From positions 310,001 to 374,000 of IMG/VR virus record IMGVR_UViG_3300042261_002385: DNA of 64,000 bases, one strand, 5' to 3'. Positions 11,902-34,008 of this stretch are shown here, one piece after another. Each line of letters begins with the position of its first letter. The first letter of the stretch is position 1. A program made the position numbers and the translations under genes. The notes beneath the pieces were generated by a model. That model worked only from the letters and a program-made list of their open reading frames with translations, was not told where the DNA came from and did not search any database.

Positions 11902-11961
11902 AGTGATTATTTTTCTTTTATATATTTTATTTAGGAAAACATATTTTACCAATATATAACA

Positions 11962-13619: not shown

Positions 13620-13679
13620 CTTTTATTACGCAATAAGGGCATTCAATTTTAATATATATTATAAATTCTGATTTTGTTT

Positions 13680-16373: not shown

Positions 16374-16475
16374 ATTTTATAATATTTTTTTAGTTATATA
16401 TTAAAATCTAAAATTGCTTTTAGTTGAAACTTTTACCACATTATCACATAAAAATTGAAATTAAAAATTTTTTTT

Positions 16476-17138
16476 ATGAATAAAGACCTCAGCAAATTCT
16501 TACTAAGTCAATCAATATCCAGTACTTTTCAGTATGACTACTTCAAAAAAACACAAAGAAAAAATACTACTTCACACCTTTTGGAATCAAACGGTCTACC
16601 TGTTGATATTTTTTCAAAATTATTAGACGAAAGAATAATTTTTTTATCAGATGAAATTGATTCAGATGTTTGTAACATCATCAAAGCACAACTTCTTTAC
16701 TTAGACAGTGAGTCAAACGATGACATTTCCATCTATATTGATAGCCCGGGTGGGTCAGTTTATTCAGGAATGGGATTGTTAGATGTGATTGACTTTGTTA
16801 ATTGTGATATATCAACAGTAAATACTGGATTAGCAGCATCTATGGCAGCAGTAATTCTTTGTTCAGGTGAAAAAGGAAAAAGAAAAGCTTTAAAAAGAAG
16901 TAGAACTATGATACATCAACCTCTTACCTATGGTGGTTGGATGCAACAAGCATCTGATGTAGAAATAGAAGCTAAAGAAATGAATCATCTAAAAAGAGAA
17001 TTATACGAAATTATTTCAGACAGAACTGGACAGTTGTATGATAAAGTTTATAAAGATGGTGATAGAGACTACTGGATGTCATCTAATGATGCGAAAAAGT
17101 ATGGTATGATTGATGAGATTATTGCCAAAAGAAAATAA
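16476..17138 (+). CDS. clpP: ATP-dependent Clp protease proteolytic subunit
   Basis: DIFSKLLDERIIFL, YIDSPGGSV, AASMAA (Ser), MIHQP (His), RD.WMS (Asp); ATG 16476 preferred over the TTG start. Confidence 0.95.
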   Translation: MNKDLSKFLLSQSISSTFQYDYFKKTQRKNTTSHLLESNGLPVDIFSKLLDERIIFLSDEIDSDVCNIIKAQLLYLDSESNDDISIYIDSPGGSVYSGMGLLDVIDFVNCDISTVNTGLAASMAAVILCSGEKGKRKALKRSRTMIHQPLTYGGWMQQASDVEIEAKEMNHLKRELYEIISDRTGQLYDKVYKDGDRDYWMSSNDAKKYGMIDEIIAKRK

Positions 17139-17475: not shown

Positions 17476-17585
17476 AATTTGAGTTTATTTTTTTTTATAT
17501 ATCAATAAGTTTTATGTCCCTTATAAAAAACCTCAAAAAAATCAAGATATTAAACCAGAACATTGATTTTATATATAAATATGAG

Positions 17586-19231: not shown

Positions 19232-21862
19232 ATGGGCAAATTAGAGGCTAAAGGAACTTACATCAGTAAAATGAACTCCACTCAGAAAAAAAACATGGAT
19301 ATCATTATTCAAGTTTTTAAGGATGGAGGCGTAACTAATCCAATTTTTATTGCAGCTGTGCTTGGTATTGTAAGTAAAGAAAGTGCTTTTACAATTCAAA
19401 GAGAAAACATGAACTATACTACTGTAGCTCGATTACAGGAGGTCTTTGGATTAGACAAAACAAAAGCTTCTGAAATTGTCGGTAATGAAAAAGCTATCGC
19501 CAACTGGGTTTATGGGGCCAAACCACATGGTCGAAACAAATCACCACACATAGGTAATACAGGTGCGAATGATGGTTATAATTATAGAGGAGGTGGATTT
19601 AATGGAATTACTTTTAAGGCAGGTTATGAAAAATACTCGGATATAGCTGGATTTGATATGGTGAAAGATCCAGACAAAATTAATAACGCGGTAGTCTCCG
19701 CCAAAATTCTTTTAAAATATTATAGAAATACAGTTCCTCAAGTTGGAAAATCATATGGTAGTGCAACTATGAATGACTTTAAAAATTTAGAAGATGCAGT
19801 TTTGTGTGCATACCACTGCACTGCTGGAACAGGTAAAAAAGTTTCTAAAATTAAAGCCCTTCTTCTCAATGATTCATTAGGTGGAATGACAAAAGCACAA
19901 CATCGAAAAGAGGAATTCTATGAATATGTAAAAAAATTCGCAGGTCTTAAAGAACCATTGGGTGCTGTTTTATCCTCTGGCTCAAGTGGAAATGCTACTC
20001 CTGAAGTTCAAGGGGTCACAGCTTCGGAACAAACTCAACAACCAGCTTCTTTACCAGCACCTCCACCACCACCACCTGATCCACGAGCAGATGGTTATGT
20101 CAAACTTGAGAAAGTTTCAGGTCCAGGTGAGATGATGGGTGAGGTTGAAGCAGAAGTTATTTTTGGTGAAACCATTTTTAAAGGACTTCAATTTGATAAA
20201 GAAGGTGATTACGTTGTAAAGGCATATCACACATTTGAAGGAGTTGAACCATTAGAATTTTTAGTGAAAGTCCAACTTAATGAAAATCCACCCTCAACTG
20301 AAAAACCAACTCAAGAAGAAGAAACTGGAAAAAGACCAATTATTACGCAAATAGACCCACCAACAATTGCTTTAGCTCCAATTCAGATGCCTGTGCCCCA
20401 AGATTCAAACAAACAAGCAAACGCTGAAACACTAAAACAGATAGGTTTGACACCATTTATCTGGTACAATGGTTATCAAATAAAAGAGAATGATATTTAC
20501 TATTTAGTTTTATATTATAAAGGAATAGTTCCGGCAGTAGAAGTGAATTTTATAGACTCAGCAGCCATTCTTAAAAAGGTAGGTTTTCCAGGTTCTGATT
20601 CAACTTTTGATGTATTCATGAATTCTGGAAGTGCAGTTCTTAAGTCTATACACTTAAGAATGAAGATAGATAACTTTCAAGAAAACCCAAACAAAACATA
20701 TACGATGACAGGAACTCTTGATTTGAGAGACTTTTATAAAGTTAACTATAGATCTTGGACCGGAACGTCTTTTGAAGTTTTAAGACAAATGTGTAGTGAA
20801 CTTAAAATTGGATACAACTCTAACATTGATAAAACCGATGATAGTATGAAATGGACCAATACAGGTATGACCTGGAGAGAATTTATGGGTGATGTGATAA
20901 GACATTCTTATATCGCAGATGACTCTTTTACTCTAGCATACATCGATTTTTATTACTGTTTAAACTATGTAGATTTAGAGAAAGAGTGGAGAAGAGATGT
21001 TAGTGCTGACGTTGGTATATCATCAACAGGAACTTCACAAATTGATACTAAAACACCGGATGCTGATAAACTACTACCACTTGTTTTAATGAATGAGAAG
21101 TCTCAGAATAGTGCGAACACTTATTTCTTGAACTACTCTGTTCAAAATAACGCTACTAATAAAGCTATTTCAAATGGTCAATTTACTATAAGTAAATATT
21201 ATGATACTGCGACTAAACAGTTTTTGATTTTCAATGTAGACTCTCTTACGACTCAGGATGATTCCAAAATAATTCTTAAAGGAAAACCAGCAGATTCGAC
21301 GGAATTAGAAACAAACTATACGACTGTATTTGGAGGTAGAGTAGATTTATCTAATGTTCATAAAAACTATCTTTATGCGGATGTTTTAAACAGTAGAAAC
21401 TTGACCGATTTGAGTAAAATTGTAGTCACTTTAGAACTACCTCAATTAAATTTCAACTTGTACAAATTTCAAAAAATTAGAATTCAATTTATCAATGAAG
21501 CTCCAACAATCGCTGAAGAAGATTTAAACCAAAAGAGAATCAGTGGGGAGTGGATGATAGTTGATATAAAATTTTCATGGCAGGCATCCGGAACAAAAGG
21601 AGAAACAGTTCAAACCGTAACCGCAGTTAGAAAAGAATTAGAGAAAATTCCAGAAGACGGTGCCACAACCACTACACAAGAACAAGCAATTCTTAAAGAA
21701 GAAAATGTTAATGAGCTGGCTGTTGAGACACCACCAAATAGCAAATATAAAGTAGATGAAATCTACATTGTTCAAGACAAAGAAGGTAAAACATATGAAT
21801 TTACTGTGACTGAAATTTTAGAAAATGGAGTGGAAGTTAAAGGTTGGTTATATGAAGATTAA
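19232..21862 (+). CDS. Baseplate hub-like protein with N-terminal GH19-like lysozyme domain
   Basis: N-terminal SKESAF..RENMNY...ANWVYG...GNTGANDGYNYRGGG aligns with the GH19 endolysin at 62442; Pro-rich linker; C-terminal region resembles gp27/late-control-D hubs (SGEWMIVDIKF). Confidence 0.65.
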   Translation: MGKLEAKGTYISKMNSTQKKNMDIIIQVFKDGGVTNPIFIAAVLGIVSKESAFTIQRENMNYTTVARLQEVFGLDKTKASEIVGNEKAIANWVYGAKPHGRNKSPHIGNTGANDGYNYRGGGFNGITFKAGYEKYSDIAGFDMVKDPDKINNAVVSAKILLKYYRNTVPQVGKSYGSATMNDFKNLEDAVLCAYHCTAGTGKKVSKIKALLLNDSLGGMTKAQHRKEEFYEYVKKFAGLKEPLGAVLSSGSSGNATPEVQGVTASEQTQQPASLPAPPPPPPDPRADGYVKLEKVSGPGEMMGEVEAEVIFGETIFKGLQFDKEGDYVVKAYHTFEGVEPLEFLVKVQLNENPPSTEKPTQEEETGKRPIITQIDPPTIALAPIQMPVPQDSNKQANAETLKQIGLTPFIWYNGYQIKENDIYYLVLYYKGIVPAVEVNFIDSAAILKKVGFPGSDSTFDVFMNSGSAVLKSIHLRMKIDNFQENPNKTYTMTGTLDLRDFYKVNYRSWTGTSFEVLRQMCSELKIGYNSNIDKTDDSMKWTNTGMTWREFMGDVIRHSYIADDSFTLAYIDFYYCLNYVDLEKEWRRDVSADVGISSTGTSQIDTKTPDADKLLPLVLMNEKSQNSANTYFLNYSVQNNATNKAISNGQFTISKYYDTATKQFLIFNVDSLTTQDDSKIILKGKPADSTELETNYTTVFGGRVDLSNVHKNYLYADVLNSRNLTDLSKIVVTLELPQLNFNLYKFQKIRIQFINEAPTIAEEDLNQKRISGEWMIVDIKFSWQASGTKGETVQTVTAVRKELEKIPEDGATTTTQEQAILKEENVNELAVETPPNSKYKVDEIYIVQDKEGKTYEFTVTEILENGVEVKGWLYED

Positions 21863-21876
21863 AAATAAAATGTAGT

Positions 21877-22509
21877 ATGAAAAAGATAATTTCAAATTCG
21901 TTTAAGTGTGAAATAGGTGACTATAACTGTTTGCAAAATTTAGACCAAACAAATATAGATTCAAATGCTAATATGATTTCAAAAATAAACTCAGAATTGA
22001 AAAATTATTACAAAGAGTTGAAAAAAAATCCATACGTTTCTTCACTCAGAATAACAATAGATGATTTAAATTTTATTGTTAATTGGGAAGCTACAATTGA
22101 CGAAAGTCCAGACGGAAGGGCGTATATAGGATTGGCCTGTAGAGGAGCATCTGGTAAATCAGATGGAGTGGATGGATCCATACATAGAGCATTTATTAAA
22201 ACTGATTCTAAGAAAAAAAAATTACTTAGAGAAGTTTCAAAGAAAACAGAAATTGCAGACATAGCTGATTTCAATTTTCAAACCAAAACATCAGGTTTTA
22301 GTATACGACAAATATTTGTTATTTACACTAATCCAGAAATGTATCCTTACTTACCTAAATCACAAAATAAAAATTTTGTCGTTGGTAAAGTAATTGAAGC
22401 AGATCCAGATAAAATTGACAACAACGGTGAACTAATCTCTTCTCTTCATTCAGGAGAAGCTTATTCTCAGATAATGAATTCATTATTTAGAAGAAACAAA
22501 ACACAATAA
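21877..22509 (+). CDS. Hypothetical protein, homologous to the N-terminal domain of 22521..25712
   Basis: NPYVSSLRITID..FIVNWEATIDESPDGRAYIGL versus NPCITAIKLNVI..WTVEWEVTIEESPDGNAYVGL. Confidence 0.75.
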   Translation: MKKIISNSFKCEIGDYNCLQNLDQTNIDSNANMISKINSELKNYYKELKKNPYVSSLRITIDDLNFIVNWEATIDESPDGRAYIGLACRGASGKSDGVDGSIHRAFIKTDSKKKKLLREVSKKTEIADIADFNFQTKTSGFSIRQIFVIYTNPEMYPYLPKSQNKNFVVGKVIEADPDKIDNNGELISSLHSGEAYSQIMNSLFRRNKTQ

Positions 22510-22520
22510 TATATAATTCG

Positions 22521-25500
22521 ATGTCAGTTAAAGTAATTAGTGATAAATTTGGTGGTTTAGGAACAGCTTGTCAGGGTAGTTGGGATGCAATGCACACCTT
22601 TTCTACAAGAAAAATTGGTGGAAATTTTGGTAAAGATAAGTCAGGTGCAAGTCTTGACAAAGGAGGCCGAATGCACTCAAAAGTATCAGAAGCTCTTAAA
22701 GCCTTTTATAAAGACTATGGTCTCAATCCTTGTATAACCGCCATAAAACTTAATGTTATTGCTTCAACTTGGACAGTAGAGTGGGAGGTGACGATAGAGG
22801 AATCCCCTGACGGAAATGCATATGTTGGTTTAAATTCTTGGGGAGGAGCCAGTGGTGGTTACCCGTCAAAAAAACCACCGTCAGGACACGCTTATAGTAA
22901 TTATAAAACAAAAAGAAAAGAAATAGGAGCAACACCAGGTGTTGTTATTGCAGATGTTTTAGACTTTCATTTTCCAGGAGGTTTCCGTCAAATATTCTTT
23001 CAACATACGGATCCGAAATATCCAAATAAACCAAAATCTGCTAATGCTAAGATAGGAACTGTAGGTGTTCAAGTTGGACCAAGTGGTTCACCTAAAAACT
23101 TACCAGAATATAATAATACTGTAGTATACACAACTTCAATAACACCAGGAGCTGCTACATCTACAACGGCTACGACAACAGAAACTCAGGGTTCTACACA
23201 AAGTGCTGGTGCTACAGCAAAAGTAGGAACAGTAGATGGAACGTCTGTGAACACTGGTGGTAGTTTTGACTTTGTCACTTTAAAAGAGTGTTTTATAAGT
23301 GTTCCACCGAGACGAGGAGGAAGTGTTCCTATTTTTATCTATTATCCTAAAAATGAAATTTTTGAAACAGATTTTGAAAAAACAGAAAACATTTTTAAAT
23401 TTAGTATAGGTGAGGATAATGTAAAAGGAACACACTCCGGTATTAAGATGGCAAACCGAGTAATCGGTTTTGATAATAAATTTTTTAAATTAAACGATAA
23501 TAAAGTTGATGAACAGATTCTGGCTCAAACAGAGTCTCCAGTTAAAGACTGGTTTAATAAATATGTTAATGTTTTTGCAAATAATCCATACTCTGATTTT
23601 AATAAACTTGTTCAAGAGGTAGTTCAAGAGATTGAATCAAGAGCTCTTTTGCCATCATCTCTTAACTTATTTCTTTATGGTGAGTCAACTAACTCCGATA
23701 CTCCTGTAATGCAGGAGATTCCTAATCTTACAGCTAATATTAAAACAATAACTTTAATGGAGGCGGTTCCAACAGTAGAGTTAGTTGATATTGCGACAAA
23801 AATTAAAGCAGCTGGTGGTAAAGTTTATTACACCTATAATCCAAAGTTATTCAATATTGATTTAACCGACATCACATTAGTGACTTCAAATCCAACAGCG
23901 GCCACATACTCATTTAAAAATGGAACAATTGGTCAAAGTTCGGCTATGTTTCCTAACTCATCTCTTATTGGTTTCACACCGTCAGTTGTGTCTAATCCAG
24001 TCGCGTCAAACTCTGGGTTAACAACAAGTTTCTGGGATTTGACACTTCCAATCTCAGTAAATAAAAATGGAGCAAACTGGGAACTAAACTTTGGAGGAAC
24101 AATTGAATCAAAAGCAGTTTTAGCCACTGGACCGACTGGATCAGAAAATTATTTGGTTCCATTTCTACCTGGTGGACTTTATAATGGATTTTCACCACGA
24201 GGATTAGTATGGTTAGATGGCAAAGTAATTCACAAAGGGCCTAAAGTGACAAATGACTTGTCGGTTTATAGAAATTTCTTCAGTAGTATATCATATGAAG
24301 ATAAAGAATGGATTTTCACAACAACAGCGACAGCTTCAGGAACTGGTTCAACAGCAACACCTGCCATTGAAGAGCTTGGAGTAACTTTTTCATTTAGACA
24401 TAGAGGTCTAAAAGATACCTTAGTTCCATTTACTTACACAAAATTATCTGACGATTTAATAAAAGCAGGTGCTTACGTTTACGATTTATCTAAAGATGCT
24501 GCGTATAATAGAACAAGAGCGGGTGGAACAGGATCTGGCTGGCCAGAATTAATTCAACAACCACCTACACTACAAAGTGCAACTGGATCCAGTCAATCAG
24601 GATCTACTGCGTCAGGTGCTACAGTCTCTGCTACTGCAAGTTTTTCAATAAGATATTTAAATTTACAAAGCACCGAAGCTGAACTTAATATAGAAATAAC
24701 TCCACAATTAGCTTTACAAATATTTTCTTACGATATTGAAAGCATTGTTGGAAAAAGTGCCAATCCAAGCCAAACACCTGCTCAAATACCAAAAATAAGG
24801 GGACAATTCGTGTTTGATGTGAGGTATAAAGATAAACTAATAAACGATCAACTAGGTGAGTTTACGATAATAGAAAAAGTCGAAATAGATCCGTTCATAG
24901 TCACCACATCAGATGATATATCTGGACTAGATCCATCATTTTTAGAAGAAGCGTTCTCTGGAGAAGAGGAGTCACTAGATGATGATGTTCCATCAGATGA
25001 CCTTAAAACTTTTTTAGGTGAGTTATACAATGAAGAAGAAGCACAATTAGAACAAGAGGCTACTCAACAAGTATCTGCATCAACAAGTGGTTCTTCAACC
25101 CTGAGTGCAAGCGGACCTGAACAAGACATAAATTTACCTGGTAAAATCAAAGTGAATAGAAGTGATGCTGAAATTTTCTGGAGTCAATTAGCTGGATATA
25201 ATGGTAAAACTGAAATACCATCTGGTAGTAACGCAGGTGATCCGGTAGCAAGATTCTTAAAGGATGTTGGTTTAGGTGTTGGAAATCCGTGGTGTATGGC
25301 ATTTGTTTACTCACAGTTTAAAGAATTCTGTAATAAAAAAGGTCTTAAAAATCCATTACCTAAAACAGGTGGTTGTAAATATTTCTGGTCACAAGCACCG
25401 AAAGACTTTAAAATTTTAGCATCAGCTGCAGCCGCTAATCCAAAACTAATAAAAGGAGGGCAAATTTTTATTAAGTCGAGAGACGGTGGAGGACACACTG

Positions 25501-25712
25501 GTATAGTTCTTAAAGCTGATGGACCAAGCCACTTCTTATCAATAGACGGTAACTCATCAGATAAAGTTAGACTTAATAGATATCAAACATCTAGTATGAT
25601 GGGATTCATAGACTTTTTCTCAAATCCATACTTTCAAGATGCTGTAGAAGAATTAGCCACACCTCTTTTGAAATCAAGTAAAATTGAAAAAGGTGGAGGT
25701 AAAGAAACTTAA
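22521..25712 (+). CDS. Large tail-associated protein with C-terminal CHAP/NlpC-P60-type peptidoglycan hydrolase
   Basis: GNPWCMAFV...GQIFI...GGGHTGIV...SIDGNS (Cys/His catalytic pair); Thr/Ser/Ala-rich linkers. Confidence 0.75.
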   Translation: MSVKVISDKFGGLGTACQGSWDAMHTFSTRKIGGNFGKDKSGASLDKGGRMHSKVSEALKAFYKDYGLNPCITAIKLNVIASTWTVEWEVTIEESPDGNAYVGLNSWGGASGGYPSKKPPSGHAYSNYKTKRKEIGATPGVVIADVLDFHFPGGFRQIFFQHTDPKYPNKPKSANAKIGTVGVQVGPSGSPKNLPEYNNTVVYTTSITPGAATSTTATTTETQGSTQSAGATAKVGTVDGTSVNTGGSFDFVTLKECFISVPPRRGGSVPIFIYYPKNEIFETDFEKTENIFKFSIGEDNVKGTHSGIKMANRVIGFDNKFFKLNDNKVDEQILAQTESPVKDWFNKYVNVFANNPYSDFNKLVQEVVQEIESRALLPSSLNLFLYGESTNSDTPVMQEIPNLTANIKTITLMEAVPTVELVDIATKIKAAGGKVYYTYNPKLFNIDLTDITLVTSNPTAATYSFKNGTIGQSSAMFPNSSLIGFTPSVVSNPVASNSGLTTSFWDLTLPISVNKNGANWELNFGGTIESKAVLATGPTGSENYLVPFLPGGLYNGFSPRGLVWLDGKVIHKGPKVTNDLSVYRNFFSSISYEDKEWIFTTTATASGTGSTATPAIEELGVTFSFRHRGLKDTLVPFTYTKLSDDLIKAGAYVYDLSKDAAYNRTRAGGTGSGWPELIQQPPTLQSATGSSQSGSTASGATVSATASFSIRYLNLQSTEAELNIEITPQLALQIFSYDIESIVGKSANPSQTPAQIPKIRGQFVFDVRYKDKLINDQLGEFTIIEKVEIDPFIVTTSDDISGLDPSFLEEAFSGEEESLDDDVPSDDLKTFLGELYNEEEAQLEQEATQQVSASTSGSSTLSASGPEQDINLPGKIKVNRSDAEIFWSQLAGYNGKTEIPSGSNAGDPVARFLKDVGLGVGNPWCMAFVYSQFKEFCNKKGLKNPLPKTGGCKYFWSQAPKDFKILASAAAANPKLIKGGQIFIKSRDGGGHTGIVLKADGPSHFLSIDGNSSDKVRLNRYQTSSMMGFIDFFSNPYFQDAVEELATPLLKSSKIEKGGGKET

Positions 25713-25754
25713 TAAAAGTTGAATCACAAGCAAGTTTTATTTAATATATAAATC

Positions 25755-28700
25755 ATGGCAAATGGACTTTCGGCTGAAGATATAGAAAACTTACGTAAAG
25801 AGGGAATTTCAATCACGGATGTTAATGTTAATACAAACGGATTATCATTAACAGGAACTGCATTTAGTTCTCCTTTGGAGAAACAAAAATATGCAATATA
25901 CTCTGCCAGGTTAACACAACAGCAACTACAAAAGATTATTTCTTTGAATTCCGGTTCACCTTGGCCACAAACTCAATTGAACCCGGAGTTTAGTAGCACA
26001 ACTGGATTTCTACCATCTGTACTACTTCAACCAACTTTACAATCTAACCCAGTAAGCTCGCAATTTTCAGCTGGTAGAGATGCAACAGGTGATGTTAAAG
26101 TTACACAAACATATGCTAATTATAAATTTGTAGATTGGAGAGGTCAGCAACTAAGTTTTCCACCAAAATCTTTGACAACAGAAGATAGATTTTATGCAGG
26201 TAAAGATCTACCAAGAAATAGTCCAATTCTAGTAGACAAACCATACTCTATGAGAGATGTTCCTTTGATATTTGGAGATGGTAGAATGGATTACTTTAGA
26301 CATGGCTTACAAGTAATAGGTGACGGAAAGGCTGTAAGTAATTTGACTCCGATTGACAACAACGCTCTTGGAGCATCGAACCAAAGGTTAGCAAACTTTA
26401 AAGAAACTCCATGGGAAAATGAAGATCCACCGATGTTTGGATTTGATATAATCTTTGATTCTTTTTCTTCTCCATTATTAAATGGATCTTTGACCGACTT
26501 CATAGCAAACTATTCAAATGTAAGTGAGATTGCATCAAAAAGACAAGTCTATGAGGAATTTAAAAATCAGTTTCAGAAATTCTTTAGAATAAATGGTGAA
26601 ATGAAAGTTGACTCTACTCAGATTGCTATGACTTCTTTATATAGTACAGTAGCTGGTGCTGATTCAGCATCATCTATACATAATCCACATAAAAAAAATT
26701 ATTTAGGTCATTATGTGAAAAAAATCTCTGGTCTGGATTTTTTAATTGAACAGAATAAAGGAGATACAATCAAATACACACCAGACTACAAAAAAGACTT
26801 TATAACACTTCAATTACGAGAGGATGTCTCTATGAATATGGGTGTTTTAGCACATCTTTATAAAACACTATATTGGTCAAAGCCAAATGGAAAGATGTTA
26901 ATACCTGAAAATCTACTTAGATTTAACTGTATAATTATCATTTCAGAATGTAGAAACTTTCAAAGAGTAAAGAAAGGTATCAAAAACCCAGAAAATATAA
27001 ACATCATAAAAGACAATCTCTCAAGATATGTTTACACACTCAGAGAGTGTCAATTTTATTTTGACAAATTGCCTCTAAACAATGAGGTCGATTTAGGAGA
27101 CCAAGGACCTACTATGTATGAAAGTTATGATGTAAATTTTGACTTTAAGTATTCGAGTGTAAAACTCGAAAGATTTGTTCCAAATGGGGATTGGGGAAAT
27201 TATGTCGGTATAGATGGTGGTTCAATTTGGAAAGTTGGTAATAAAGGAACAAGAAATTCTAGAGGAACAACAGGATCTCAAGAATTATCAACTCCGAGAT
27301 TTTTCACCGTAGGTCCTGATAACGAAACTTACACATATTATCCAAACTTAAAAATAAATGGTGAAGAAAAACCATACATAATGGCTGTTTATGGACCTAA
27401 AGCCGACCAACAAGATGAATTTAATTTTGCACAAAAGAAAAGCTCTGAGGGAACTATTGGTGGTAATAACGAAGGATCAGGAGGTCAAAACGTGGGACAA
27501 TTAGGAGCTGGAAATGATGGAACTAATAATCAGACTTCTTCATCAACAACTGGAACTGAAGCTTCGGGTGGAGGAACACCAGGTAGTGGATTAACAAGTC
27601 CAAATGGATCTAAGGCAAGCACTAATGAGGGTTCCGCAGCCGGTGGTTCTTTAGACGCACTTAAAAGTCAATCTCAACAAGCATCCGAAAGCTCTAAACA
27701 ACAAGCTGAAATTACAGCGGTCCAAGATGCTACAAATTCACAGAAAAAAATGGCTTTTGGTTCGGTTAATGCCGCACTAGGTGATGTATCATTAAGTAAA
27801 ATCACAAAAACTGTTGCTACACCTTTAAATCAAGTAGTTGCCAATAAAAGCATATCTTCTGATATTGTTTCAGGTAAGTTTTTTGACAAAATGGGTAGTC
27901 TAAAATTAGAGGATAGTCTTAAAGGAATAAAAACTGGAGGACTTGCCAATTTAAGTAGTTTAGGTGAAAGTCTTAGCGGTTCTCTAAGTGGTTCTCTAAG
28001 TGGTGGTCTATCCGGACTTAAAAGCGCTATTCCTTCATTAGATTCAGTAAAAACTAAATTTTCAGAGGCTAAAAGTAAGGCTACTAGTGGATTTTTTGAT
28101 ATAAGAGGAAATCTTAAATCTAGCTTAACTGATGGTGTAAACAAAGCCGGTTCACTATTTAAGGGACTAAGCTCACAAGCTGACGGTTTATTAGGTGGTC
28201 TCGGAGGCCAAGCTAGTGGTTTACTAGGTGGCTTGTCAACACAATTAAAAGGAGGGCTTCCGTCTTTAGACTCCGTCAAAACTAAGTTTTCTTTAGCTAA
28301 AACTCAAGCTACTAGTGGTTTCTTTGATATCAGGGGAAATCTCAAATCTAGTCTTACTGAAGGAGCAGCCGGTTTAAAAACAAAAGCTGGTGGATTATTT
28401 GGAAATTTAGGCGGTCAAGCAGAGGGTCTGCTTGGTGGTCTGACCGACAAGGTAAAATCCGCTGTTCCATCTTTAGATTCAGTTAAAACTAAATTCTCAG
28501 CAGCTAAATCACAAGCTACTAGTGGATTCTTTGATATCAGGGGAAATCTCAAATCAAGTCTTACTGAAGGATCTGAAAAGTTGACAGGTGGTGGATTATT
28601 CTCAGGACTTAGTAAACAAACAGACGGTCTGTTATCTGGATTGACTGACAAAGTAAAATCATCCGTTCCATCCTTAGATTCAGTTAAGACTAAATTCTCT

Positions 28701-29213
28701 GCTGCAATTTCACAACCGACATCTAGTTTCTTTGATATAAGAGGAAATCTTAAGTCAACATTAACAGAAGGGGCCAATAAAATAATGACATCATTTGATC
28801 AGGCAGTCGATGATGCAAATTCTTTAACTGATCAAGTGAGTAAAAAGAAAAATGATACAATTAATTTAGTCAAAGGTTTACTAAACCAGGAAGTAGAGGA
28901 ATCAAAGTCAAATATTGGTAAATTCATAAGTGTTGATAGTCTAAAGGAAAAGTTCACAAATGCATCTGAAATTCCAAACAGTTCATTTTTTGATATCAGA
29001 AGTCAAATATCTGGAGAAAAAGGTAATGACACAAGTTCTTTGAACTTAAGAAAGAACCTTTTAAACAACACAATAGATAAAATATATAATACTAAAAATT
29101 CTTCAACCTCACCTATAAAATCAAATACACCACCAGCGACATCATTTTTTGACTTAAAAAATCAACTTAAAGATTTCCTCGGAGGAACCTTAGGTGACAA
29201 ACTAACTGAGTAA
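25755..29213 (+). CDS. Large structural protein (tail/baseplate-like N-terminal half, repetitive Gly/Ser/Leu-rich C-terminal half)
   Basis: 1152-aa ORF in the baseplate cluster, late promoter, overlaps the gp5-like gene. Confidence 0.65.
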   Translation: MANGLSAEDIENLRKEGISITDVNVNTNGLSLTGTAFSSPLEKQKYAIYSARLTQQQLQKIISLNSGSPWPQTQLNPEFSSTTGFLPSVLLQPTLQSNPVSSQFSAGRDATGDVKVTQTYANYKFVDWRGQQLSFPPKSLTTEDRFYAGKDLPRNSPILVDKPYSMRDVPLIFGDGRMDYFRHGLQVIGDGKAVSNLTPIDNNALGASNQRLANFKETPWENEDPPMFGFDIIFDSFSSPLLNGSLTDFIANYSNVSEIASKRQVYEEFKNQFQKFFRINGEMKVDSTQIAMTSLYSTVAGADSASSIHNPHKKNYLGHYVKKISGLDFLIEQNKGDTIKYTPDYKKDFITLQLREDVSMNMGVLAHLYKTLYWSKPNGKMLIPENLLRFNCIIIISECRNFQRVKKGIKNPENINIIKDNLSRYVYTLRECQFYFDKLPLNNEVDLGDQGPTMYESYDVNFDFKYSSVKLERFVPNGDWGNYVGIDGGSIWKVGNKGTRNSRGTTGSQELSTPRFFTVGPDNETYTYYPNLKINGEEKPYIMAVYGPKADQQDEFNFAQKKSSEGTIGGNNEGSGGQNVGQLGAGNDGTNNQTSSSTTGTEASGGGTPGSGLTSPNGSKASTNEGSAAGGSLDALKSQSQQASESSKQQAEITAVQDATNSQKKMAFGSVNAALGDVSLSKITKTVATPLNQVVANKSISSDIVSGKFFDKMGSLKLEDSLKGIKTGGLANLSSLGESLSGSLSGSLSGGLSGLKSAIPSLDSVKTKFSEAKSKATSGFFDIRGNLKSSLTDGVNKAGSLFKGLSSQADGLLGGLGGQASGLLGGLSTQLKGGLPSLDSVKTKFSLAKTQATSGFFDIRGNLKSSLTEGAAGLKTKAGGLFGNLGGQAEGLLGGLTDKVKSAVPSLDSVKTKFSAAKSQATSGFFDIRGNLKSSLTEGSEKLTGGGLFSGLSKQTDGLLSGLTDKVKSSVPSLDSVKTKFSAAISQPTSSFFDIRGNLKSTLTEGANKIMTSFDQAVDDANSLTDQVSKKKNDTINLVKGLLNQEVEESKSNIGKFISVDSLKEKFTNASEIPNSSFFDIRSQISGEKGNDTSSLNLRKNLLNNTIDKIYNTKNSSTSPIKSNTPPATSFFDLKNQLKDFLGGTLGDKLTE
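28026..28770 (+). repeat. Four ~70-75-aa coding repeats with core PSLDSVKTKFSxAxxxxTSxFFDIRGNLKSxLTEG
   Basis: Units start near 28026, 28257, 28461 and 28665; degenerate FFD(I/L/K) copies near 27880, 28985 and 29145. Confidence 0.92.
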
Positions 29214-31486
29214 TGAAAGATAGGAAAGTTGAACAGGGTAAAACCTATGTAGGAGTAGTTGAGGACAATCTAGACCCTGATAAGTTAGGTAGACTCAAAA
29301 TAAGAGTAGTGGATGTTTTTGATGAAGCAAAAGTTGAAGACTTACCATGGGCTTCACCTTGGAAAGATTTAGCTGGTGGTCAAATTGGTATACCAGAAAA
29401 AGGTAAAGTCGTTATATGTGTGTTTGAACAGGGTGATGCTTACAAACCAGAATACATATCAACAGAACACTGGAATATAAATCTTGAAAACAAACTAAAA
29501 GGTCTTTCAGATACAGATTACATTTCCATGAAGTCAGTTATATTTGACCACAAAACTCAAATATATTCTAATGATAGTGAAGGTCTAAAACTAGACTACA
29601 AGTTTAATAATGTAAATATCAAAAATAACGGCATAAATTTAAACTTAAAAGATAACTCAGGTTTAGTAAACATAGGAGATTCAACAGCTAATCAACAAGC
29701 TATTTTAGGAAATCACTTTCTAAATTGGTTTGATTCTTTTGTTGATGCTCTTATGAATAATACAGCATTTTTAGGAAACGCCGGAGCTCCAGTGTTGTCA
29801 AATCCAGCATTAGTAAGAATACTCAGCCAGTATAAATCACAAAAAGATTCTACATTTTTATCACATCATGTAAATTTTGTAGACAATAACAAAGTATCAA
29901 CCGTTAAATTAGAATCCAGAGAAGAAACACCCCAATCAGGTGACACTTGGCAATCTACAAAATCTGAAAACACACTCACTACAACTTCCACTGAAACGAA
30001 TAAACCAACTGACGGAGAAAAACCACCATACGATGAAAAGCATGTCGAGCCAGCAACCGATAAACCCGGTGTGCTACCAACTGAAGTTCCACCTGCTAAA
30101 GTTGTTGAACCACTTCCAGATAAAAGCCTACCAGAATCAAATAAAAAAGTCGAAAAACTCATCTGGTTTCTGAAAAGTAAAAATTATCAGATTTATGAAG
30201 TCAATTCACAAATCAATATGGTAGCCTTTAGATCGAAGAACAAAGTCAAAGATGATGAAAATACAAATATAACTAACTTATTCGATGAAGAACTTTGTGT
30301 TTTTTTCAAAAATGAAAATAATATTTGGGAACTATTTGAATATGCGATTACTACAGTTCCTGGTTATGTCCCGGCTAAAACAGAATTACCAGATAAAGTT
30401 GGAATACTAGCTCTGGGTCAGTATATAGAAAGGTTAAAAATGATTAATTATTTAGGAAATGCCTCATATCCCGCATTATCATTTGATGAGTGCTCGTTAC
30501 ATAGAAATGATAAATTAGATAGATACAATTTTGATGCACCAATCGAAACAGGAAACTTTGCAATGACAATTCATAGGTCCTCAGATGTAAATAGTAGTGA
30601 GTTTGTGTTCAATTATTCCGAAGGAGCTCAAGTTTTCAAAAACTTGAATCAATATGAACAATTCATTAAGATATGTCAAAAACAAATCGACAAAGGTGCA
30701 AAATCTACTTTTACATACACACTCTGCTCTAAAAAAGAATTTGAAGAATATGCTAGTCCGGATGAACAAAGAGAACTAGCTAAAACTTTACCCGCTACAC
30801 TGGAAACAACAACGGTTGCACCAACTGCTTCAACAGCCGTAGCAGCCACTCAAAGTCCACCAGCGAACGAATATAAAAAAGAAATGGAGTCTTTAATAAA
30901 GAGAAGGTTTGCTTCAGAGTCAGGTAAACCTGGAATAAAAAGTTTTATAGATAGATTTACCAAAGATGGTTCTAACTCGTTTGAGGTTAGTAAGTCAATC
31001 TCTTTTGCAGAGGGCATAGGTCGCAAAAATATTGAAGAATTAAATAAAAGTATGTTAGGTTTATCTAAATCAGAAATAGGAGATAATACTATTAAATATT
31101 TGGTTTTAAAAAGAATCTATCCAAAACTGAAAAAAGAACTTCAAAATCACATCAATTATTTAATCAAAAAAGGTAAACTCGATGAAAAAGATTATTACTA
31201 TGTTACTGATGGAAAAAGGTCTATTGAGAAAGGATTATATGTCTGGAGAGTTTCATTCAAAAAAAATCCGGATCCTAAAGCTCCACCAACAACCAATCCG
31301 TTTATCTTACCAAATCTATTATCTGAAACGACTTTTATAGGATTGACTAAGACTTATACTAATTTAAGACTACCAAGTGGTCAATTGCAACCTGATAAAC
31401 CGTCAAAGAATAATAGTTGGGTTCTAGAAGACACAGATCCACCGTTATATTTTGTTGAAATAAAATTTGTTCCATTTACAAAATAA
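29213..31486 (+). CDS. gp5/Vgr-like baseplate spike (OB-fold) fused to a YkuD-like domain and an unknown C-terminal domain
   Basis: YVGVVEDNLDPDKLGRLKIRV...DLPWASP...IPEKG..V...FEQGD..KP.Y OB-fold; middle ITTVPG...GQY...TIHR...YSEGAQVF. Confidence 0.78.
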   Translation: MKDRKVEQGKTYVGVVEDNLDPDKLGRLKIRVVDVFDEAKVEDLPWASPWKDLAGGQIGIPEKGKVVICVFEQGDAYKPEYISTEHWNINLENKLKGLSDTDYISMKSVIFDHKTQIYSNDSEGLKLDYKFNNVNIKNNGINLNLKDNSGLVNIGDSTANQQAILGNHFLNWFDSFVDALMNNTAFLGNAGAPVLSNPALVRILSQYKSQKDSTFLSHHVNFVDNNKVSTVKLESREETPQSGDTWQSTKSENTLTTTSTETNKPTDGEKPPYDEKHVEPATDKPGVLPTEVPPAKVVEPLPDKSLPESNKKVEKLIWFLKSKNYQIYEVNSQINMVAFRSKNKVKDDENTNITNLFDEELCVFFKNENNIWELFEYAITTVPGYVPAKTELPDKVGILALGQYIERLKMINYLGNASYPALSFDECSLHRNDKLDRYNFDAPIETGNFAMTIHRSSDVNSSEFVFNYSEGAQVFKNLNQYEQFIKICQKQIDKGAKSTFTYTLCSKKEFEEYASPDEQRELAKTLPATLETTTVAPTASTAVAATQSPPANEYKKEMESLIKRRFASESGKPGIKSFIDRFTKDGSNSFEVSKSISFAEGIGRKNIEELNKSMLGLSKSEIGDNTIKYLVLKRIYPKLKKELQNHINYLIKKGKLDEKDYYYVTDGKRSIEKGLYVWRVSFKKNPDPKAPPTTNPFILPNLLSETTFIGLTKTYTNLRLPSGQLQPDKPSKNNSWVLEDTDPPLYFVEIKFVPFTK

Positions 31487-31528
31487 TCATTTTCACCATT
31501 TAATATATAAAAATAAAAACTAATAAAA

Positions 31529-31783
31529 ATGGATAATCCTAGATATTTAGTAAATATAGTTTATGTTCCTGCTAGACATACTGGTCAGCAGAAAATCACA
31601 GTTAATGGAGTAACTCAATCGATGCCTACCTACTCTACAGAGATGTTTGTGGCTTCTATGCCAGAGATTAGAATTGCTGCTTCTGGTTCAACTTATCAAA
31701 CAGCGTTGAGTAATTTATTATTGATAGCTACTTCTTCCACCACACCATCTAATGGTTATGGGCCTCTTGGTGGTTATAGATAA
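31529..31783 (+). CDS. Small hypothetical late protein
   Basis: 84-aa ORF with TAATATATA upstream. Confidence 0.65.
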   Translation: MDNPRYLVNIVYVPARHTGQQKITVNGVTQSMPTYSTEMFVASMPEIRIAASGSTYQTALSNLLLIATSSTTPSNGYGPLGGYR

Positions 31784-31785
31784 TT

Positions 31786-34008
31786 TTATGGCTTAAATAA
31801 ATCAGTTCCATTGTATTCCCAATGCCAAGGTTCATATCCAGCACCGGCTTTTTTAGCCCAGTTTGGATTAATCCAGCCATATTTTTTTGCATTAGCTTCC
31901 ATCCAGTCGAAATATTGATTGCCTGGACCATTTCCAAAACCACCAATATCTACTGCTTGACCCCAACCATGTTTTGATGTTCCTGGAGGAGCAGCCGCTA
32001 CACCTGTTGGTTTTTTAGCATTAAACGATCCGACTTTTCTACCTTTATTTTTAGGATCGACTTTTTTGGTATATGGATTTAATCCAGTATCATAATAGTC
32101 CCAATCAAAAATTTTGTTCTGAACGTTAAATGTTCTGTATCCATCAGTTATTTTCATGTCTTTACCAAACTGGGCTTTATAAGCTTTGTTTAGTTCATTA
32201 AGTTTCTTTACAGCATTTTTTTCTATCTTGTGACCACAGAAGTCTAATTTTGTTAACAAATTACTTGGTAAATCACCATTAAAAACTGTTCTACCTTGGA
32301 CAGTAAGTTTTTGTTGAAACCTCTTTTGTCCAGAACCACCTCCCTTAGAGGCACTGTCCGTAGCTGTTTTTGCCGACACCTCAACTTCTGGAGTTCCCGT
32401 AGACGCAGTTTCTGCTGCGACAGTAGAAGTTCCTTCAGTTGTTGTAGAACCTTCAGTCTCTTCTTCTAATCCACCAGATTCTCCGAAGGCACTTTGCTCA
32501 GCGTCATTTAAATTAAAGTCAATCTGTTCATCCTCACCGACGAAAGCTTCCTCTAAAAACTCAGGAGATAATCCAGATAAGTCATCAGCTTCATCACTGA
32601 ATATAAATCCTTCTACCGGAACGTCGGCTTCTATATCACCAACCCATATTTGAAATTGAGGAGCAGGCTCATCAGTTTTTACGATCCAATTCTCAGGAAA
32701 CACTGGATTCATTTTTATCAAAACTACCGGTTCACTTTGTGTAGCTGCAATTGCCGCTGATCCACTTCCACCAGTAGCAGGATTTGGAGTAAGAACGTTC
32801 GGATTATCTCCAACTGTTTCCCACTTGAAAGCCTTCCCAGAATCTGTAAAGGACTTTTTAGGTGAATAATCATTTATCAAATCGGTCTCTGGATATGTGT
32901 AACTAGGAACTGCTAACCTTAAGTTATAACTTTTAGCTGAAGGATATGAGGTCGCTAATGACTTAACCCAATTTTCTATTACATTATTTACTATAAATTC
33001 ATCTTTCACTTCATAGCTAAATGTGATAGACAATGGTATTGTAGAATTTGTTATACCACCGGCAAACTCTAAAACATATCTCGGATTGTATTTATCATCA
33101 AATGACCAAAATCTTTCAAACTCCTCATCACCTTCATCATCAGCAGATGGTTGCACCACTGGATTAGGAACAACATAAAAACTTTTGAAAATATAATTTG
33201 GAGTATTCACTTCTTTTAAAGATTCATCTGAATATTCGTAACCTGAAATATTTCTGGTAAAACTCGACGGCCCAGTTTTCGGTAGAGTTAAATCTACAGA
33301 CACACCGGAAACAGAAATCACATAGTCTCCTGTGCCTTGTTCAAAGCCATCATTTAGTGCACTATTTTGAGCGTGCGCTAATGCACTACTAAGTGTATAG
33401 GTATTTGAAAGTGTTACTCCATAAAACTCATCGATACTACCTGTTCCGGTAGATGTTTTATAGTTTAATTCAAAAAAATTAGGAAGTTCTACATCTATAT
33501 CAGCTGGTGATAATCCATCAAGTAAAATCGCTGTGTCAACCAGAATCTTAGTCGGATCAGAAGCTGTTCCATTTCCATAAACTTCATATGCTTCAAATTG
33601 ATAAGTTATTTCTAGATTTTTTCTCCAAGAAATATTAATATAAGCTCCATTATTTAAGTAATATGGATCCTCTCCGAATTTTCTCAACTGAGGAACGTCA
33701 TCAGCCCAAGGATTCTGAACTATTTTAAATAAGTTCGGTCCTAATTTTGAACCTATTTTATTAGCCTCGAATTCCGAATTACTACTAATATACTCTTGTA
33801 TAATTTCGTCATTAGTTTTGGTTTGATATCTCTCACCGTCGTAAATTACTTCTTGCCAATACAACTGACCACTCAGTGAAACTTTACCAACAGCTATTCT
33901 TTGTGAGTTTGACGCTGTTCCTTGTAATAGCATTACTCTTAAATCCAGAGCACCGGTGTTTGCACCTTCTACTATTTTTCTAACTCTTACTTGTTTTAAT
34001 GTATCCAT
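31786..34008 (-). CDS. Large tail-associated protein with C-terminal M15 (VanY-like) Zn D-Ala-D-Ala peptidase
   Basis: ITDGYRTF..Q...AAPPGTSKHGWGQAVDI...YGW...EPWHWEY. Confidence 0.85.
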   Translation of the reverse strand: MDTLKQVRVRKIVEGANTGALDLRVMLLQGTASNSQRIAVGKVSLSGQLYWQEVIYDGERYQTKTNDEIIQEYISSNSEFEANKIGSKLGPNLFKIVQNPWADDVPQLRKFGEDPYYLNNGAYINISWRKNLEITYQFEAYEVYGNGTASDPTKILVDTAILLDGLSPADIDVELPNFFELNYKTSTGTGSIDEFYGVTLSNTYTLSSALAHAQNSALNDGFEQGTGDYVISVSGVSVDLTLPKTGPSSFTRNISGYEYSDESLKEVNTPNYIFKSFYVVPNPVVQPSADDEGDEEFERFWSFDDKYNPRYVLEFAGGITNSTIPLSITFSYEVKDEFIVNNVIENWVKSLATSYPSAKSYNLRLAVPSYTYPETDLINDYSPKKSFTDSGKAFKWETVGDNPNVLTPNPATGGSGSAAIAATQSEPVVLIKMNPVFPENWIVKTDEPAPQFQIWVGDIEADVPVEGFIFSDEADDLSGLSPEFLEEAFVGEDEQIDFNLNDAEQSAFGESGGLEEETEGSTTTEGTSTVAAETASTGTPEVEVSAKTATDSASKGGGSGQKRFQQKLTVQGRTVFNGDLPSNLLTKLDFCGHKIEKNAVKKLNELNKAYKAQFGKDMKITDGYRTFNVQNKIFDWDYYDTGLNPYTKKVDPKNKGRKVGSFNAKKPTGVAAAPPGTSKHGWGQAVDIGGFGNGPGNQYFDWMEANAKKYGWINPNWAKKAGAGYEPWHWEYNGTDLFKP

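What the first reader, a model, noticed from the sequence alone, without database searches (positions are those of the whole stretch)
24912..32586. Near-identical 20-aa acidic motif precedes the hydrolase domain in two otherwise unrelated tail proteins
Seen: DDISGLDPSFLEEAFSGEEE (24912-24971, CHAP protein, + strand) and DDLSGLSPEFLEEAFVGEDE (32527-32586, M15 protein, - strand). Each is followed by an acidic then Thr/Ser/Ala-rich linker and a C-terminal enzyme. Inference: a conserved docking or maturation-cleavage signal that loads interchangeable enzymatic warheads on the baseplate, conceptually like cargo-loading motifs in contractile injection systems. I know of no description of it.
Basis: partly seen in the sequence, partly recalled or inferred. 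Interest (0 to 1): 0.75.

Follow-up and report, generated by a model that had tools for sequence, protein, structure and literature searches.

The report
Junction motif for swappable megaphage lysins
Two structural proteins encoded beside the tail-spike gene of a 436-kb freshwater phage share a short acidic junction. It marks where a constant body ends and an interchangeable cell-wall-cutting enzyme begins, and relatives show the enzymes being swapped by recombination inside that junction.

Summary
Both 20-residue strings lie at the stated coordinates, in a 1063-aa protein ending in a CHAP domain and a 740-aa protein ending in a VanY/M15 domain. The similarity is not chance (BLASTP E 4e-7). 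It is the tip of a shared junction domain of about 70 residues (hhalign E 3.5e-9). Its core is E-[YF]-x-E-x-x-F-x-G-x-[ED]-E.

Across about 20 related huge-phage loci, exactly two proteins per genome carry it, both flanking the gp5-like hub gene. At least three body families unrelated by sequence carry it, and at least nine wall-hydrolase families follow it.

- Conservation collapses directly after the motif.
- Bodies 99% identical carry different enzymes.
- Four or five cassette types occur on more than one body family.
- In one gene the DNA crossover maps inside the motif's G-L-A-P codons. A second body-A gene switches parentage at the same P-E|F point at protein level.
- Synonymous sites between the two copies are near saturation, so the amino acids themselves are under selection.
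- The two copies co-vary within genomes.

"Interchangeable warheads" is therefore strongly supported. Docking or cleavage remains untested. The motif never occurs on free cargo, so it resembles the pre-toxin junctions of polymorphic toxins more than cargo-loading tags. I found no prior description: a new variant of a known kind.

The parts
22521..25712 (+). Gene A: 1063-aa structural-block protein made of body A, junction domain, acidic/ST-rich tether and a CHAP cassette
   Evidence: ORF list and translation. Homologues with a conserved body and varying C-terminus.
24765..24983 (+). Junction domain of A (residues 749-821), the only region homologous to protein B
   Evidence: hhalign A6 vs A5: 71 columns, probability 96%, E 3.5e-9. 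It is also the only region shared with the third body family A'. No Pfam family matches it.
24912..24971 (+). Motif copy 1, DDISGLDPSFLEEAFSGEEE (residues 798-817). Core is P-S-F-L-E-E-A-F-S-G-E-E-E.
24972..25220 (+). Acidic then Ser/Thr/Ala-rich tether of A. Column conservation drops from 0.76 to 0.46 at residue 818.
25278..25553 (+). CHAP peptidoglycan-hydrolase domain (residues 920-1011)
   Evidence: Pfam CHAP E 5.9e-5, below cut-off here. The fragment P0057, whose cassette is 95% identical to family member P0043's, is above cut-off. Family members match PHROG 1259, 'baseplate hub subunit and tail lysozyme'.
31786..34008 (-). Gene B: 740-aa structural-block protein made of body B, junction domain, tether and a VanY/M15 cassette
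32518..32748 (-). Junction domain of B (residues 421-497)
   Evidence: hhalign.
32527..32586 (-). Motif copy 2, DDLSGLSPEFLEEAFVGEDE (residues 475-494)
32284..32526 (-). Acidic then Thr/Ser/Ala/Gly-rich tether of B. Conservation drops from 0.75 to 0.40 at residue 495.
31807..32232 (-). VanY (M15) D-Ala-D-Ala carboxypeptidase-type domain (residues 593-734)
   Evidence: Pfam VanY E 1.1e-20, 74.3 bits. Its nearest PHROG is the M15 segment of a tape-measure family.
29213..31486 (+). gp5/VgrG-like hub-spike protein (OB domain, residues 12-79), lying between genes A and B. It anchors the 'baseplate' context.
   Evidence: Pfam Phage_base_V at 32 bits, above the 23.8 cut-off, and PHROG 430. The same gene order occurs in L002, L004, L006, L007, L008 and L011.
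21877..22509 (+). 210-aa ORF, a standalone paralogue of residues 44-175 of body A
   Evidence: tblastn: 36% identity, E 5e-12.

Best explanation
SHOWN. The motif is the acidic tip of a junction domain of about 60-70 residues. That domain ends the constant, presumably virion-embedded body of two proteins per genome. Both are encoded on either side of the gp5-like hub gene in a clade of huge freshwater and marine phages.

Everything after the motif is a cassette: a highly acidic, flexible tether plus one peptidoglycan hydrolase, typically 200-280 residues in all. Recombination replaces this cassette, between phages and between the two loci. The motif is the only homology the two loci share. One crossover maps inside its codons at DNA level, and a second event switches at the same point at protein level. 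The amino-acid sequence itself is under purifying selection.

INFERRED. The conserved core, E-[YF]-x-E-x-x-F-x-G-x-[ED]-E, most likely forms a short amphipathic helix or strand capped by Gly. I propose that it packs against a constant surface of the hub or baseplate, the same surface for both proteins. It would fix the point where the chain leaves the particle, and so park and present whichever tethered enzyme is attached. On this reading the enzyme stays covalently tethered and reaches the wall after the spike has penetrated.
For: - **Real homology.** BLASTP E 4e-7; hhalign 71 columns, E 3.5e-9.
- **Restricted to these proteins.** Twelve clusters among 1.84e9 protein representatives, all homologues of body A or B. 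Two copies per genome in the window's genome and in 14 other loci.
- **Boundary.** Column conservation falls from 0.76 to 0.46 (A) and from 0.75 to 0.40 (B) directly after the motif.
- **Cassette catalogue.** Downstream domains are CHAP, CHAP/DUF1287-like, VanY, tandem VanY, Peptidase_M15_4, Peptidase_C39_2, Phage_lysozyme, Phage_lysozyme2, Glyco_hydro_19 and Amidase_6-like.
- **Recent swaps.** Bodies 98.8-99% identical carry different cassettes. Cassettes are shared between body families: VanY 91.6%, M15_4 80.6%, others 47-58%.
- **DNA breakpoints of one event.** The 5' crossover lies inside the G-L-A-P codons of the motif. The 3' crossover lies 30-60 nt after the stop codon. A second event switches at the same P-E|F point at protein level.
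- **Three body families.** A, A' and B share only this domain.
- **Protein-level selection.** In within-genome A/B copies, 31 of 81 identical-residue codons differ synonymously, against 38 expected at saturation. In the window's own genome the count is 8 of 15 against 7.5 expected. E4, G9 and E12 of the core are invariant in 35 distinct sequences.
- **Co-variation.** The two copies of a genome resemble each other more than copies from other genomes (diagonal 0.46 vs 0.34; 0 of 20,000 permutations reach it).
- **Baseplate context.** Synteny with Phage_base_V is conserved. The cassettes' nearest PHROGs are tail-associated lysin segments.
Against: - No structural evidence exists for a helix or for any partner. 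AF2 models had pLDDT of about 25-45 at the junction.
- Virion location is inferred from gene order only. The bodies match no Pfam, PHROG or PDB family.
- Repeated cassette exchange or gene conversion between the loci could produce the within-genome co-variation without any common partner. L007 and L008 show fewer synonymous differences than saturation would give.
- The genomes are phylogenetically related, so the number of independent co-variation events is nearer 6-7 than 15.
Confidence: 0.55

Rival explanations
1. The motif is a maturation or release cleavage site. A phage or host protease, or autoproteolysis, would cut there. The hydrolase would then be freed, or two virion forms would arise, as with the Gly-rich junction of lactococcal Tal proteins.
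For: - The position matches that of the processed junction of TP901-1 Tal, between the structural and catalytic parts (PMC11409707).
- [YF]-x-E is kept in all 35 distinct sequences. It loosely resembles the hydrophobic-x-Glu sites of T4-type prohead proteases (my own knowledge of that family).
- A ClpP-family protease gene lies in the same conserved gene block.
Against: - No known protease consensus fits all variants. P3 is aromatic rather than Leu/Ile, and the G-x-E spacing of phiKZ-type sites is not conserved.
- Neither protein contains a protease domain or a nucleophile motif.
- Prohead proteases act inside heads, whereas these genes lie in the hub block.
- A long flexible tether after the site is easier to explain if the enzyme stays attached.
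Confidence: 0.2
2. The motif has no protein function of its own. It is kept only as a shared recombination linker that allows cassette exchange, or is homogenised by gene conversion.
For: - One crossover maps inside the motif codons at DNA level, and a second switches at the same point at protein level.
- The two copies co-vary within genomes.
- L007 and L008 show identical runs of 12-16 nt and fewer synonymous differences.
Against: - Synonymous sites between the copies are near saturation in the window, L002 and L006. The longest identical runs there are only 6-9 nt, yet the residues are conserved. Selection therefore acts on the protein, not the DNA.
- E, F, G and E stay invariant across lineages whose bodies share 25-35% identity or nothing detectable.
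Confidence: 0.1
3. The motif is a portable cargo-loading tag, like the leader signals of contractile injection systems, that recruits separately encoded enzymes to the baseplate.
For: The same motif precedes many unrelated enzymes.
Against: - It was never found on a free protein. Every hit is fused behind a body, or is a fragment beginning inside a body sequence.
- It is internal, not N-terminal.
- The genome holds no orphan cassettes.
Confidence: 0.03
4. The similarity is chance or compositional, between two acidic low-complexity linkers.
For: The region is strongly acidic, with net charge -14 to -21 over 57 residues.
Against: - Composition-adjusted BLASTP gives E 4e-7.
- Profile E is 3.5e-9.
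- Aromatic, Gly and Glu positions are invariant in register in 35 sequences.
- The next genome hit has E = 2.
Confidence: 0.01

Closest known systems
Pre-toxin junction motifs of polymorphic toxin systems (PT-VENN of CdiA, the Rhs core end), as described by Zhang et al. 2012 (PMC3482391)
   Same: A constant N-terminal delivery or anchoring part. A short conserved junction. A hypervariable C-terminal enzymatic cassette replaced by recombination at the 3' tip of the gene. Close relatives carry different cassettes.
   Different: The payloads are peptidoglycan hydrolases of a virion, not toxins against competitors. The cassette carries no immunity gene; the transplanted piece ends 30-60 nt after the stop codon. 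No orphan cassettes were found. There is no sequence relation to VENN or Rhs motifs. Exchange also runs between two paralogous positions in one genome block.
Tail-associated lysins (Tal) of lactococcal phages TP901-1 and Tuc2009
   Same: A structural tail-tip protein with C-terminal wall-degrading domains. A short motif sits at the structural/catalytic junction and controls whether the enzyme stays on the virion (PMC11409707).
   Different: The Tal motif is Gly-rich and is a proven processing site. Here the motif is acidic and aromatic and cleavage is unknown. These are presumably contractile-tailed huge phages rather than siphophages. There are two carriers per genome, and bodies unrelated to gp27-like Tal by sequence.
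T4 gp5 hub-lysozyme and 'evolved' VgrG/PAAR spikes with C-terminal effector domains
   Same: A wall hydrolase or effector is carried covalently on the puncturing hub complex of a contractile machine (own knowledge). The CHAP cassette matches the C-terminal part of PHROG 1259, 'baseplate hub subunit and tail lysozyme'.
   Different: The window's gp5-like protein matched no lysozyme or other wall-hydrolase family. Wall-hydrolase domains sit on two other proteins flanking it, each behind the shared junction domain.
Modular phage endolysins and virion-associated lysins (domain shuffling)
   Same: Catalytic domains of the same Pfam families (CHAP, M15, GH19, GH24, C39-like) are shuffled among phages. 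The reviews found treat lysins as modular.
   Different: In those cases no specific conserved junction domain has been described as the exchange point. Here one junction motif is constant across at least three body families and at least nine enzyme families.
N-terminal cargo-loading leaders of extracellular contractile injection systems
   Same: The idea of a short, enzyme-independent signal associated with varied payloads (own knowledge).
   Different: Those act in trans on separate cargo proteins and are N-terminal. This motif is internal, always fused in cis, and absent from free proteins.

Membership tests
Virion-associated peptidoglycan hydrolase / tail-associated lysin | Encoded within the tail or baseplate gene module | tested here: met
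   Both genes flank the Phage_base_V hub gene. The same order occurs in L002, L004, L006, L007, L008 and L011.
Virion-associated peptidoglycan hydrolase / tail-associated lysin | Contains a recognisable peptidoglycan-hydrolase domain | tested here: met
   VanY at 74.3 bits against a cut-off of 25. CHAP at 23.9 bits is below cut-off in the window, but 33.5 bits in the fragment P0057, whose cassette is 95% identical to family member P0043's.
Virion-associated peptidoglycan hydrolase / tail-associated lysin | Protein physically present in the virion and muralytic | not testable with these tools
   No isolate and no proteome. The bodies match no known structural family.
Polymorphic toxin-type cassette system | Constant N-terminal part with different C-terminal domains among close relatives | tested here: met
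   Bodies 98.8-99% identical carry different cassettes.
Polymorphic toxin-type cassette system | Conserved junction (pre-toxin-like) motif at the constant/variable boundary, used as the recombination point | tested here: met
   Conservation collapses after the motif. The DNA crossover lies inside the motif codons.
Polymorphic toxin-type cassette system | Standalone or orphan cassettes and cognate immunity genes travelling with the cassette | tested here: not met
   No extra motif or module copies in the 436-kb genome. The transplanted segment ends 30-60 nt after the stop codon. The feature works like such a system but is not a member.
Contractile-injection-system cargo-loading signal | Signal borne by separately encoded cargo, usually at the N-terminus, and loaded in trans | tested here: not met
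   All 12 clusters found in 1.84e9 proteins are body-fused or fragments of such proteins. The motif is internal.
Tal-type proteolytic junction | Gly-rich processing motif with demonstrated cleavage | tested here: not met
   The motif is acidic and aromatic with a single invariant Gly. Cleavage itself cannot be tested here.
T4-type or phiKZ-type prohead-protease site | Conserved (L/I)-x-E or (S/A/G)-x-E at the scissile bond | tested here: inconclusive
   [YF]-x-E is invariant, but P3 is aromatic. The residue two after the invariant Gly is E, D, Q, P or A. The consensus sites are from my own knowledge.

The most novel reading that the evidence does not exclude
The junction domain with its acidic-aromatic tip is a dedicated, portable 'lysin-mounting' adaptor of megaphage baseplates. 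It would be recognised by one conserved receptor site, or by a dedicated processing factor such as the ClpP-family protease in the same conserved gene block. It would thereby control loading, parking and triggered release of whichever wall hydrolase is attached. If so, the phage population can re-arm two baseplate positions by a crossover in the motif plus a second one just past the stop codon.
Probability: 0.2. Interest if true: 0.8.

Novelty: new variant of a known kind. Interest (0 to 1): 0.6.

Why it matters
- **A handle on unannotated megaphage baseplates.** The motif gives an operational marker for finding the wall-penetration enzymes of huge phages. These baseplate proteins match nothing in Pfam, PHROGs or the PDB. 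A simple pattern plus position next to the hub gene finds two carriers per genome and their payloads.
- **Population-level re-arming.** Phage particles can change their wall-degrading armament in the manner of polymorphic toxin systems. Particles with near-identical bodies carry an amidase/peptidase, a carboxypeptidase or a lysozyme. This probably tracks variation in host wall chemistry and so may bear on host range.
- **A natural splice point for experiments.** The junction is a tolerated site for exchanging enzymatic domains on a virion protein. That is useful for studying how tethered enzymes are deployed by contractile tails.
- **A testable partner.** If the motif binds a partner, it defines a new small interaction module.

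Tried and rejected
- **Structure prediction.** AF2 of full-length B (24-row alignment) and A (16 rows) gave mean pLDDT of 41 and 35. Only B 1-125 and parts of A 50-170 and 350-430 were usable, and the junction was not interpretable.
- **Fold searches.** Searches of those models against PDB representatives gave only Z of 6 or less, so no fold was assigned.
- **Other body searches.** PDB sequence-profile searches, ESM Atlas look-ups, Pfam on the isolated junction segments and PHROGs on all family members gave nothing for the bodies or the junction.
- **Complex prediction.** One job, the junction of A with the junction of B, returned 'no answer'. It is evidence neither for nor against binding.
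- **Phage database.** Megablast of the region and tblastn of body A against the phage collection found nothing. Body B found only the unannotated 634.8-kb record LR745206.1.
- **Frameshift idea rejected.** The F-L codons read TTTTTAG in both window copies, but the variants F-I, Y-L, Y-V and Y-T lack any slippery run.
- **Paralogous upstream ORFs rejected.** The small ORFs upstream of A (210 aa) and of B (176 aa) are not related to each other.
- **Metagenome contigs.** Contigs from four independent runs laid on the B region show the same cassette. No alternative cassette joins at the motif. Contig breaks fell at 32,697-32,759 and 32,366-32,386, not in the motif. Contigs drop rare variants, so this says little.
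- **Literature check.** I looked in a phage K tail-lysin paper for the processing I remembered. It is not there, so I do not cite it for that.


Full report
**1. The observation**

They are residues 798-817 of a 1063-aa ORF (22521-25712, +) and residues 475-494 of a 740-aa ORF (31786-34008, -).

The second protein ends in a clear VanY/M15 domain (74 bits). The first ends in a CHAP domain. That hit is below Pfam's cut-off in this copy (23.9 bits). A fragment, P0057, whose cassette is 95% identical to that of family member P0043, is above it.

After each motif comes an acidic and then Ser/Thr/Ala/Gly-rich stretch. BLASTP finds a single significant match between the proteins: 35 residues, 54% identity, E 4e-7. 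Profile-profile alignment of the two families extends this to 71 columns (A 749-821, B 421-497, probability 96%, E 3.5e-9). The shared element is therefore a small junction domain whose tip is the motif. Outside it the proteins are unrelated by sequence.

**2. Context**

The window is bases 310,001-374,000 of a 436,265-bp virus record with 31.5% G+C. CheckV estimates it at 95% complete.

- Between the two genes lies a gp5/VgrG-like hub gene (Phage_base_V). An 876-aa protein with an N-terminal lysozyme-like domain lies upstream.
- A weak sheath match elsewhere in the genome fits a contractile tail.
- The same gene order recurs: helicase, a protein of about 850-1050 aa, A, a large protein, hub, an ORF of about 85 aa, then on the other strand B, an ORF of about 175-190 aa and one of about 680-730 aa. 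It is seen in contigs belonging to records of up to 591 kb and in the 634.8-kb record LR745206.1.
- LR745206.1 is one of the largest megaphages. It clusters with Mar_Mega_1 in PMC9723777, a paper that says nothing about tails.
- Near-identical DNA occurs in lake, reservoir, drinking-water, estuary and lagoon metagenomes from ten or more studies.
- 'Tail or baseplate protein' is thus an inference from conserved neighbourhood. The bodies match no Pfam, PHROG or PDB family.

**3. Distribution of the motif**

- In six-frame translation of the whole genome, a profile of the block finds only the two ORFs. The next hit has E = 2.
- Against 1.84 billion protein representatives it finds 12 clusters. 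Every one is a homologue of body A or body B.
- A wider scan of viral contigs with the body-B alignment brought 18 distant loci. There the core is still recognisable, again in two proteins per locus wherever the locus held both gene positions.
- Over 35 distinct sequences the core is [PDS]-E-[YF]-x-E-x-x-F-x-G-x-[ED]-E. Three positions (E, G, E) are invariant and the aromatic and Phe positions are nearly so. It sits in a stretch with net charge -14 to -21 over 57 residues.
- The carriers fall into at least three body families that BLAST cannot relate: B, A and a third, A'. A' shares with A only the junction domain (58 columns, E 3.5e-8) and with B only the motif.
- The junction domain matches no Pfam model.

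**4. What follows the motif**

Column conservation drops abruptly at the residue after the motif: 0.76 to 0.46 in family A and 0.75 to 0.40 in family B.

The 200-280 residues that follow (median 239; two outliers of 323 and 425) hold a tether and one wall hydrolase. The hydrolase families seen are CHAP, CHAP/DUF1287-like, VanY, a tandem VanY, Peptidase_M15_4, Peptidase_C39_2, Phage_lysozyme, Phage_lysozyme2, Glyco_hydro_19, a weak Amidase_6-like domain, and several without a Pfam match.

**5. The cassettes are exchanged, and the motif is a crossover point**

- Bodies that are 99.0% (P0017/P0018, family B) and 98.8% (P0058/P0060, family A) identical carry different cassettes.
- Cassettes of one type sit on different body families: VanY at 91.6% identity on A and B, M15_4 at 80.6%, and three further types at 47-58%.
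- For P0048, I aligned the gene with that of a body-A relative (P0049, 93% body identity) and with a family-B gene carrying the matching cassette (P0021, 91% cassette identity). P0048 follows the A relative up to the Thr codon of D-D-L-T-G-L-A-P-E-F. It follows the B gene from the third base of the Pro codon onward. The crossover therefore lies within about 11 nt encoding G-L-A-P.
- The 3' junction lies 30-60 nt beyond the stop codon. The first 30 nt after the stop match the B locus and the last 39 nt of the contig match the A locus.
- A second, independent A-family gene (P0058) switches parentage at the same P-E|F point.
- Exchanges within family B can break further upstream, as expected where the whole body is homologous.
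- There are no spare cassettes or extra motif copies in the genome.

**6. Selection acts on the protein**

The two copies in the window differ at 8 of 15 codons that encode the same residue. Random codon draws would give 7.5. The longest identical run is 8 nt.

Summed over six genomes, 31 of 81 such codons differ, against 38 expected. So the amino-acid identity is not a relic of recent copying, although L007 and L008 show signs of more recent exchange.

The two copies of a genome are also more alike than copies from different genomes. In a 27-residue block the diagonal is 0.46 against 0.34, and 0 of 20,000 permutations reach it with 15 genomes. With the first six genomes the figure was 1 of 720.

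The genomes are related, so this reflects perhaps 6-7 independent lineages. It cannot by itself separate co-evolution with a shared partner from homogenisation by exchange.

**7. Mechanism**

Shown: the motif is the conserved end of a junction domain. It delimits a constant body from a recombinationally replaceable tether-plus-hydrolase cassette. It is the only homology between the loci and hence the place where inter-locus exchange crosses over.

Inferred (about one chance in three, against the alternatives below):

- The hydrophobic residues at i, i+1, i+4 and i+5 of P-E-F-L-E-E-A-F, the Gly cap and the flanking acids suggest a short amphipathic element.
- I propose that it packs on a constant surface of the hub or baseplate and fixes where the chain leaves the particle.
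- That would park and present the tethered enzyme, which stays attached and reaches the wall once the spike has penetrated.

Rivals:

- **Cleavage or release site (0.2).** Lactococcal Tal proteins are a precedent (PMC11409707). However, no known protease consensus fits all variants.
- **Recombination linker only (0.1).** Contradicted by saturated synonymous sites combined with invariant residues.
- **Trans cargo tag (0.03).** Contradicted by the motif's absence from free proteins.
- **Chance (0.01).**

**8. Comparison with known systems**

The architecture and evolutionary behaviour match polymorphic toxin systems. Those have a constant delivery part, a pre-toxin junction and a recombining C-terminal cassette (PMC3482391). 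This system is not a member, because it has no immunity genes, no orphan cassettes, no toxin payload and no sequence relation.

It is also a form of tail-associated lysin, comparable to Tal, T4 gp5 or evolved VgrG. It differs in having two carrier positions per genome and a dedicated junction domain shared by unrelated bodies.

Full-text searches on virion-associated and tail-associated lysins, domain shuffling, huge phages and polymorphic cassettes returned no paper describing such a junction. The one megaphage paper I read that discusses LR745206 does not mention tails or baseplates. I know of no description.

**9. Verdict**

- 'Docking or cleavage signal' remains untested.
- The cargo-loading analogy is replaced by a pre-toxin-junction analogy.
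- Novelty: a new variant of a known kind. Interest 0.6.

Noticed in passing
window 21877-22509 (+) and 22650-23045 (+): The 210-aa ORF just upstream of gene A is a standalone paralogue of residues 44-175 of body A (36% identity, E 5e-12). That region of the poor A model repeatedly gave weak fold matches (Z about 5) to tail terminator/completion (tube-like) proteins. Together these hint at a ring of paralogous tube-like domains at the hub.
   Followed up: partly
window 19232-21862 (+): An 876-aa protein has an N-terminal lysozyme-like domain (PHROG 181 'endolysin', E 4e-20), a poly-Pro linker and a C-terminal part matching only PHROGs of unknown function. It is another wall hydrolase in the hub block, with the enzyme at the N-terminus and no junction motif.
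   Followed up: partly
window 29213-31486 (+): The gp5-like hub protein has its OB domain at residues 12-79. It then has two Thr/Ser/Pro-rich linkers (about 230-310 and 525-560) around a middle domain matching PHROG 3000 (unknown function). No lysozyme or other wall-hydrolase family matched it.
   Followed up: no
window 16455-17138 (+) and 17514-19202 (+): A bona fide ClpP-family protease gene (Pfam 218 bits) and a DEAD/ResIII helicase gene sit in conserved synteny just upstream of the hub block. The same is seen in L002 and L009. Whether this protease processes virion proteins is unknown.
   Followed up: no
window 23300-23855 (+), residues about 260-445 of protein A: There are weak fold matches (Z 5-6) to SGNH and alpha/beta esterases, including mycobacteriophage D29 LysB. 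The invariant Ser389 in Y-G-E-S-T-N could be a nucleophile elbow. This is a lead only.
   Followed up: no
L024:14059-16734 (-) and L028:5239-7605 (+) / 11708-13825 (-): One distant A' protein carries two M15 domains in tandem after the motif. One lineage (record of 483 kb) has two B-family paralogues, both with the motif, carrying Phage_lysozyme2 and Peptidase_C39_2.
   Followed up: partly
window 31786-32526 versus 32700-34008: In contigs from four independent metagenomes, the listed single-base differences cluster in the cassette and tether of gene B (31861-32491). Only one is listed in the body. Just 40 of 242 differences were shown, so this is an impression and not a count.
   Followed up: no
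genome G000:C1:236677-236877 (-), outside the window: A 1334-aa ORF has a weak Phage_sheath_1 match (24.7 bits, below cut-off). It is probably an enlarged tail sheath. No GPW_gp25 or Baseplate_J match exists anywhere in the genome. The collection labels the record 'provirus', which is odd for a 436-kb contig rated 95% complete.
   Followed up: no
window 24939-24947 and 32551-32559: The F-L-E codons read TTTTTAGA in both copies, which resembles a slippery run. It is not conserved in relatives with F-I, Y-L or Y-V at these positions, so it is most likely just codon usage in an AT-rich genome.
   Followed up: yes
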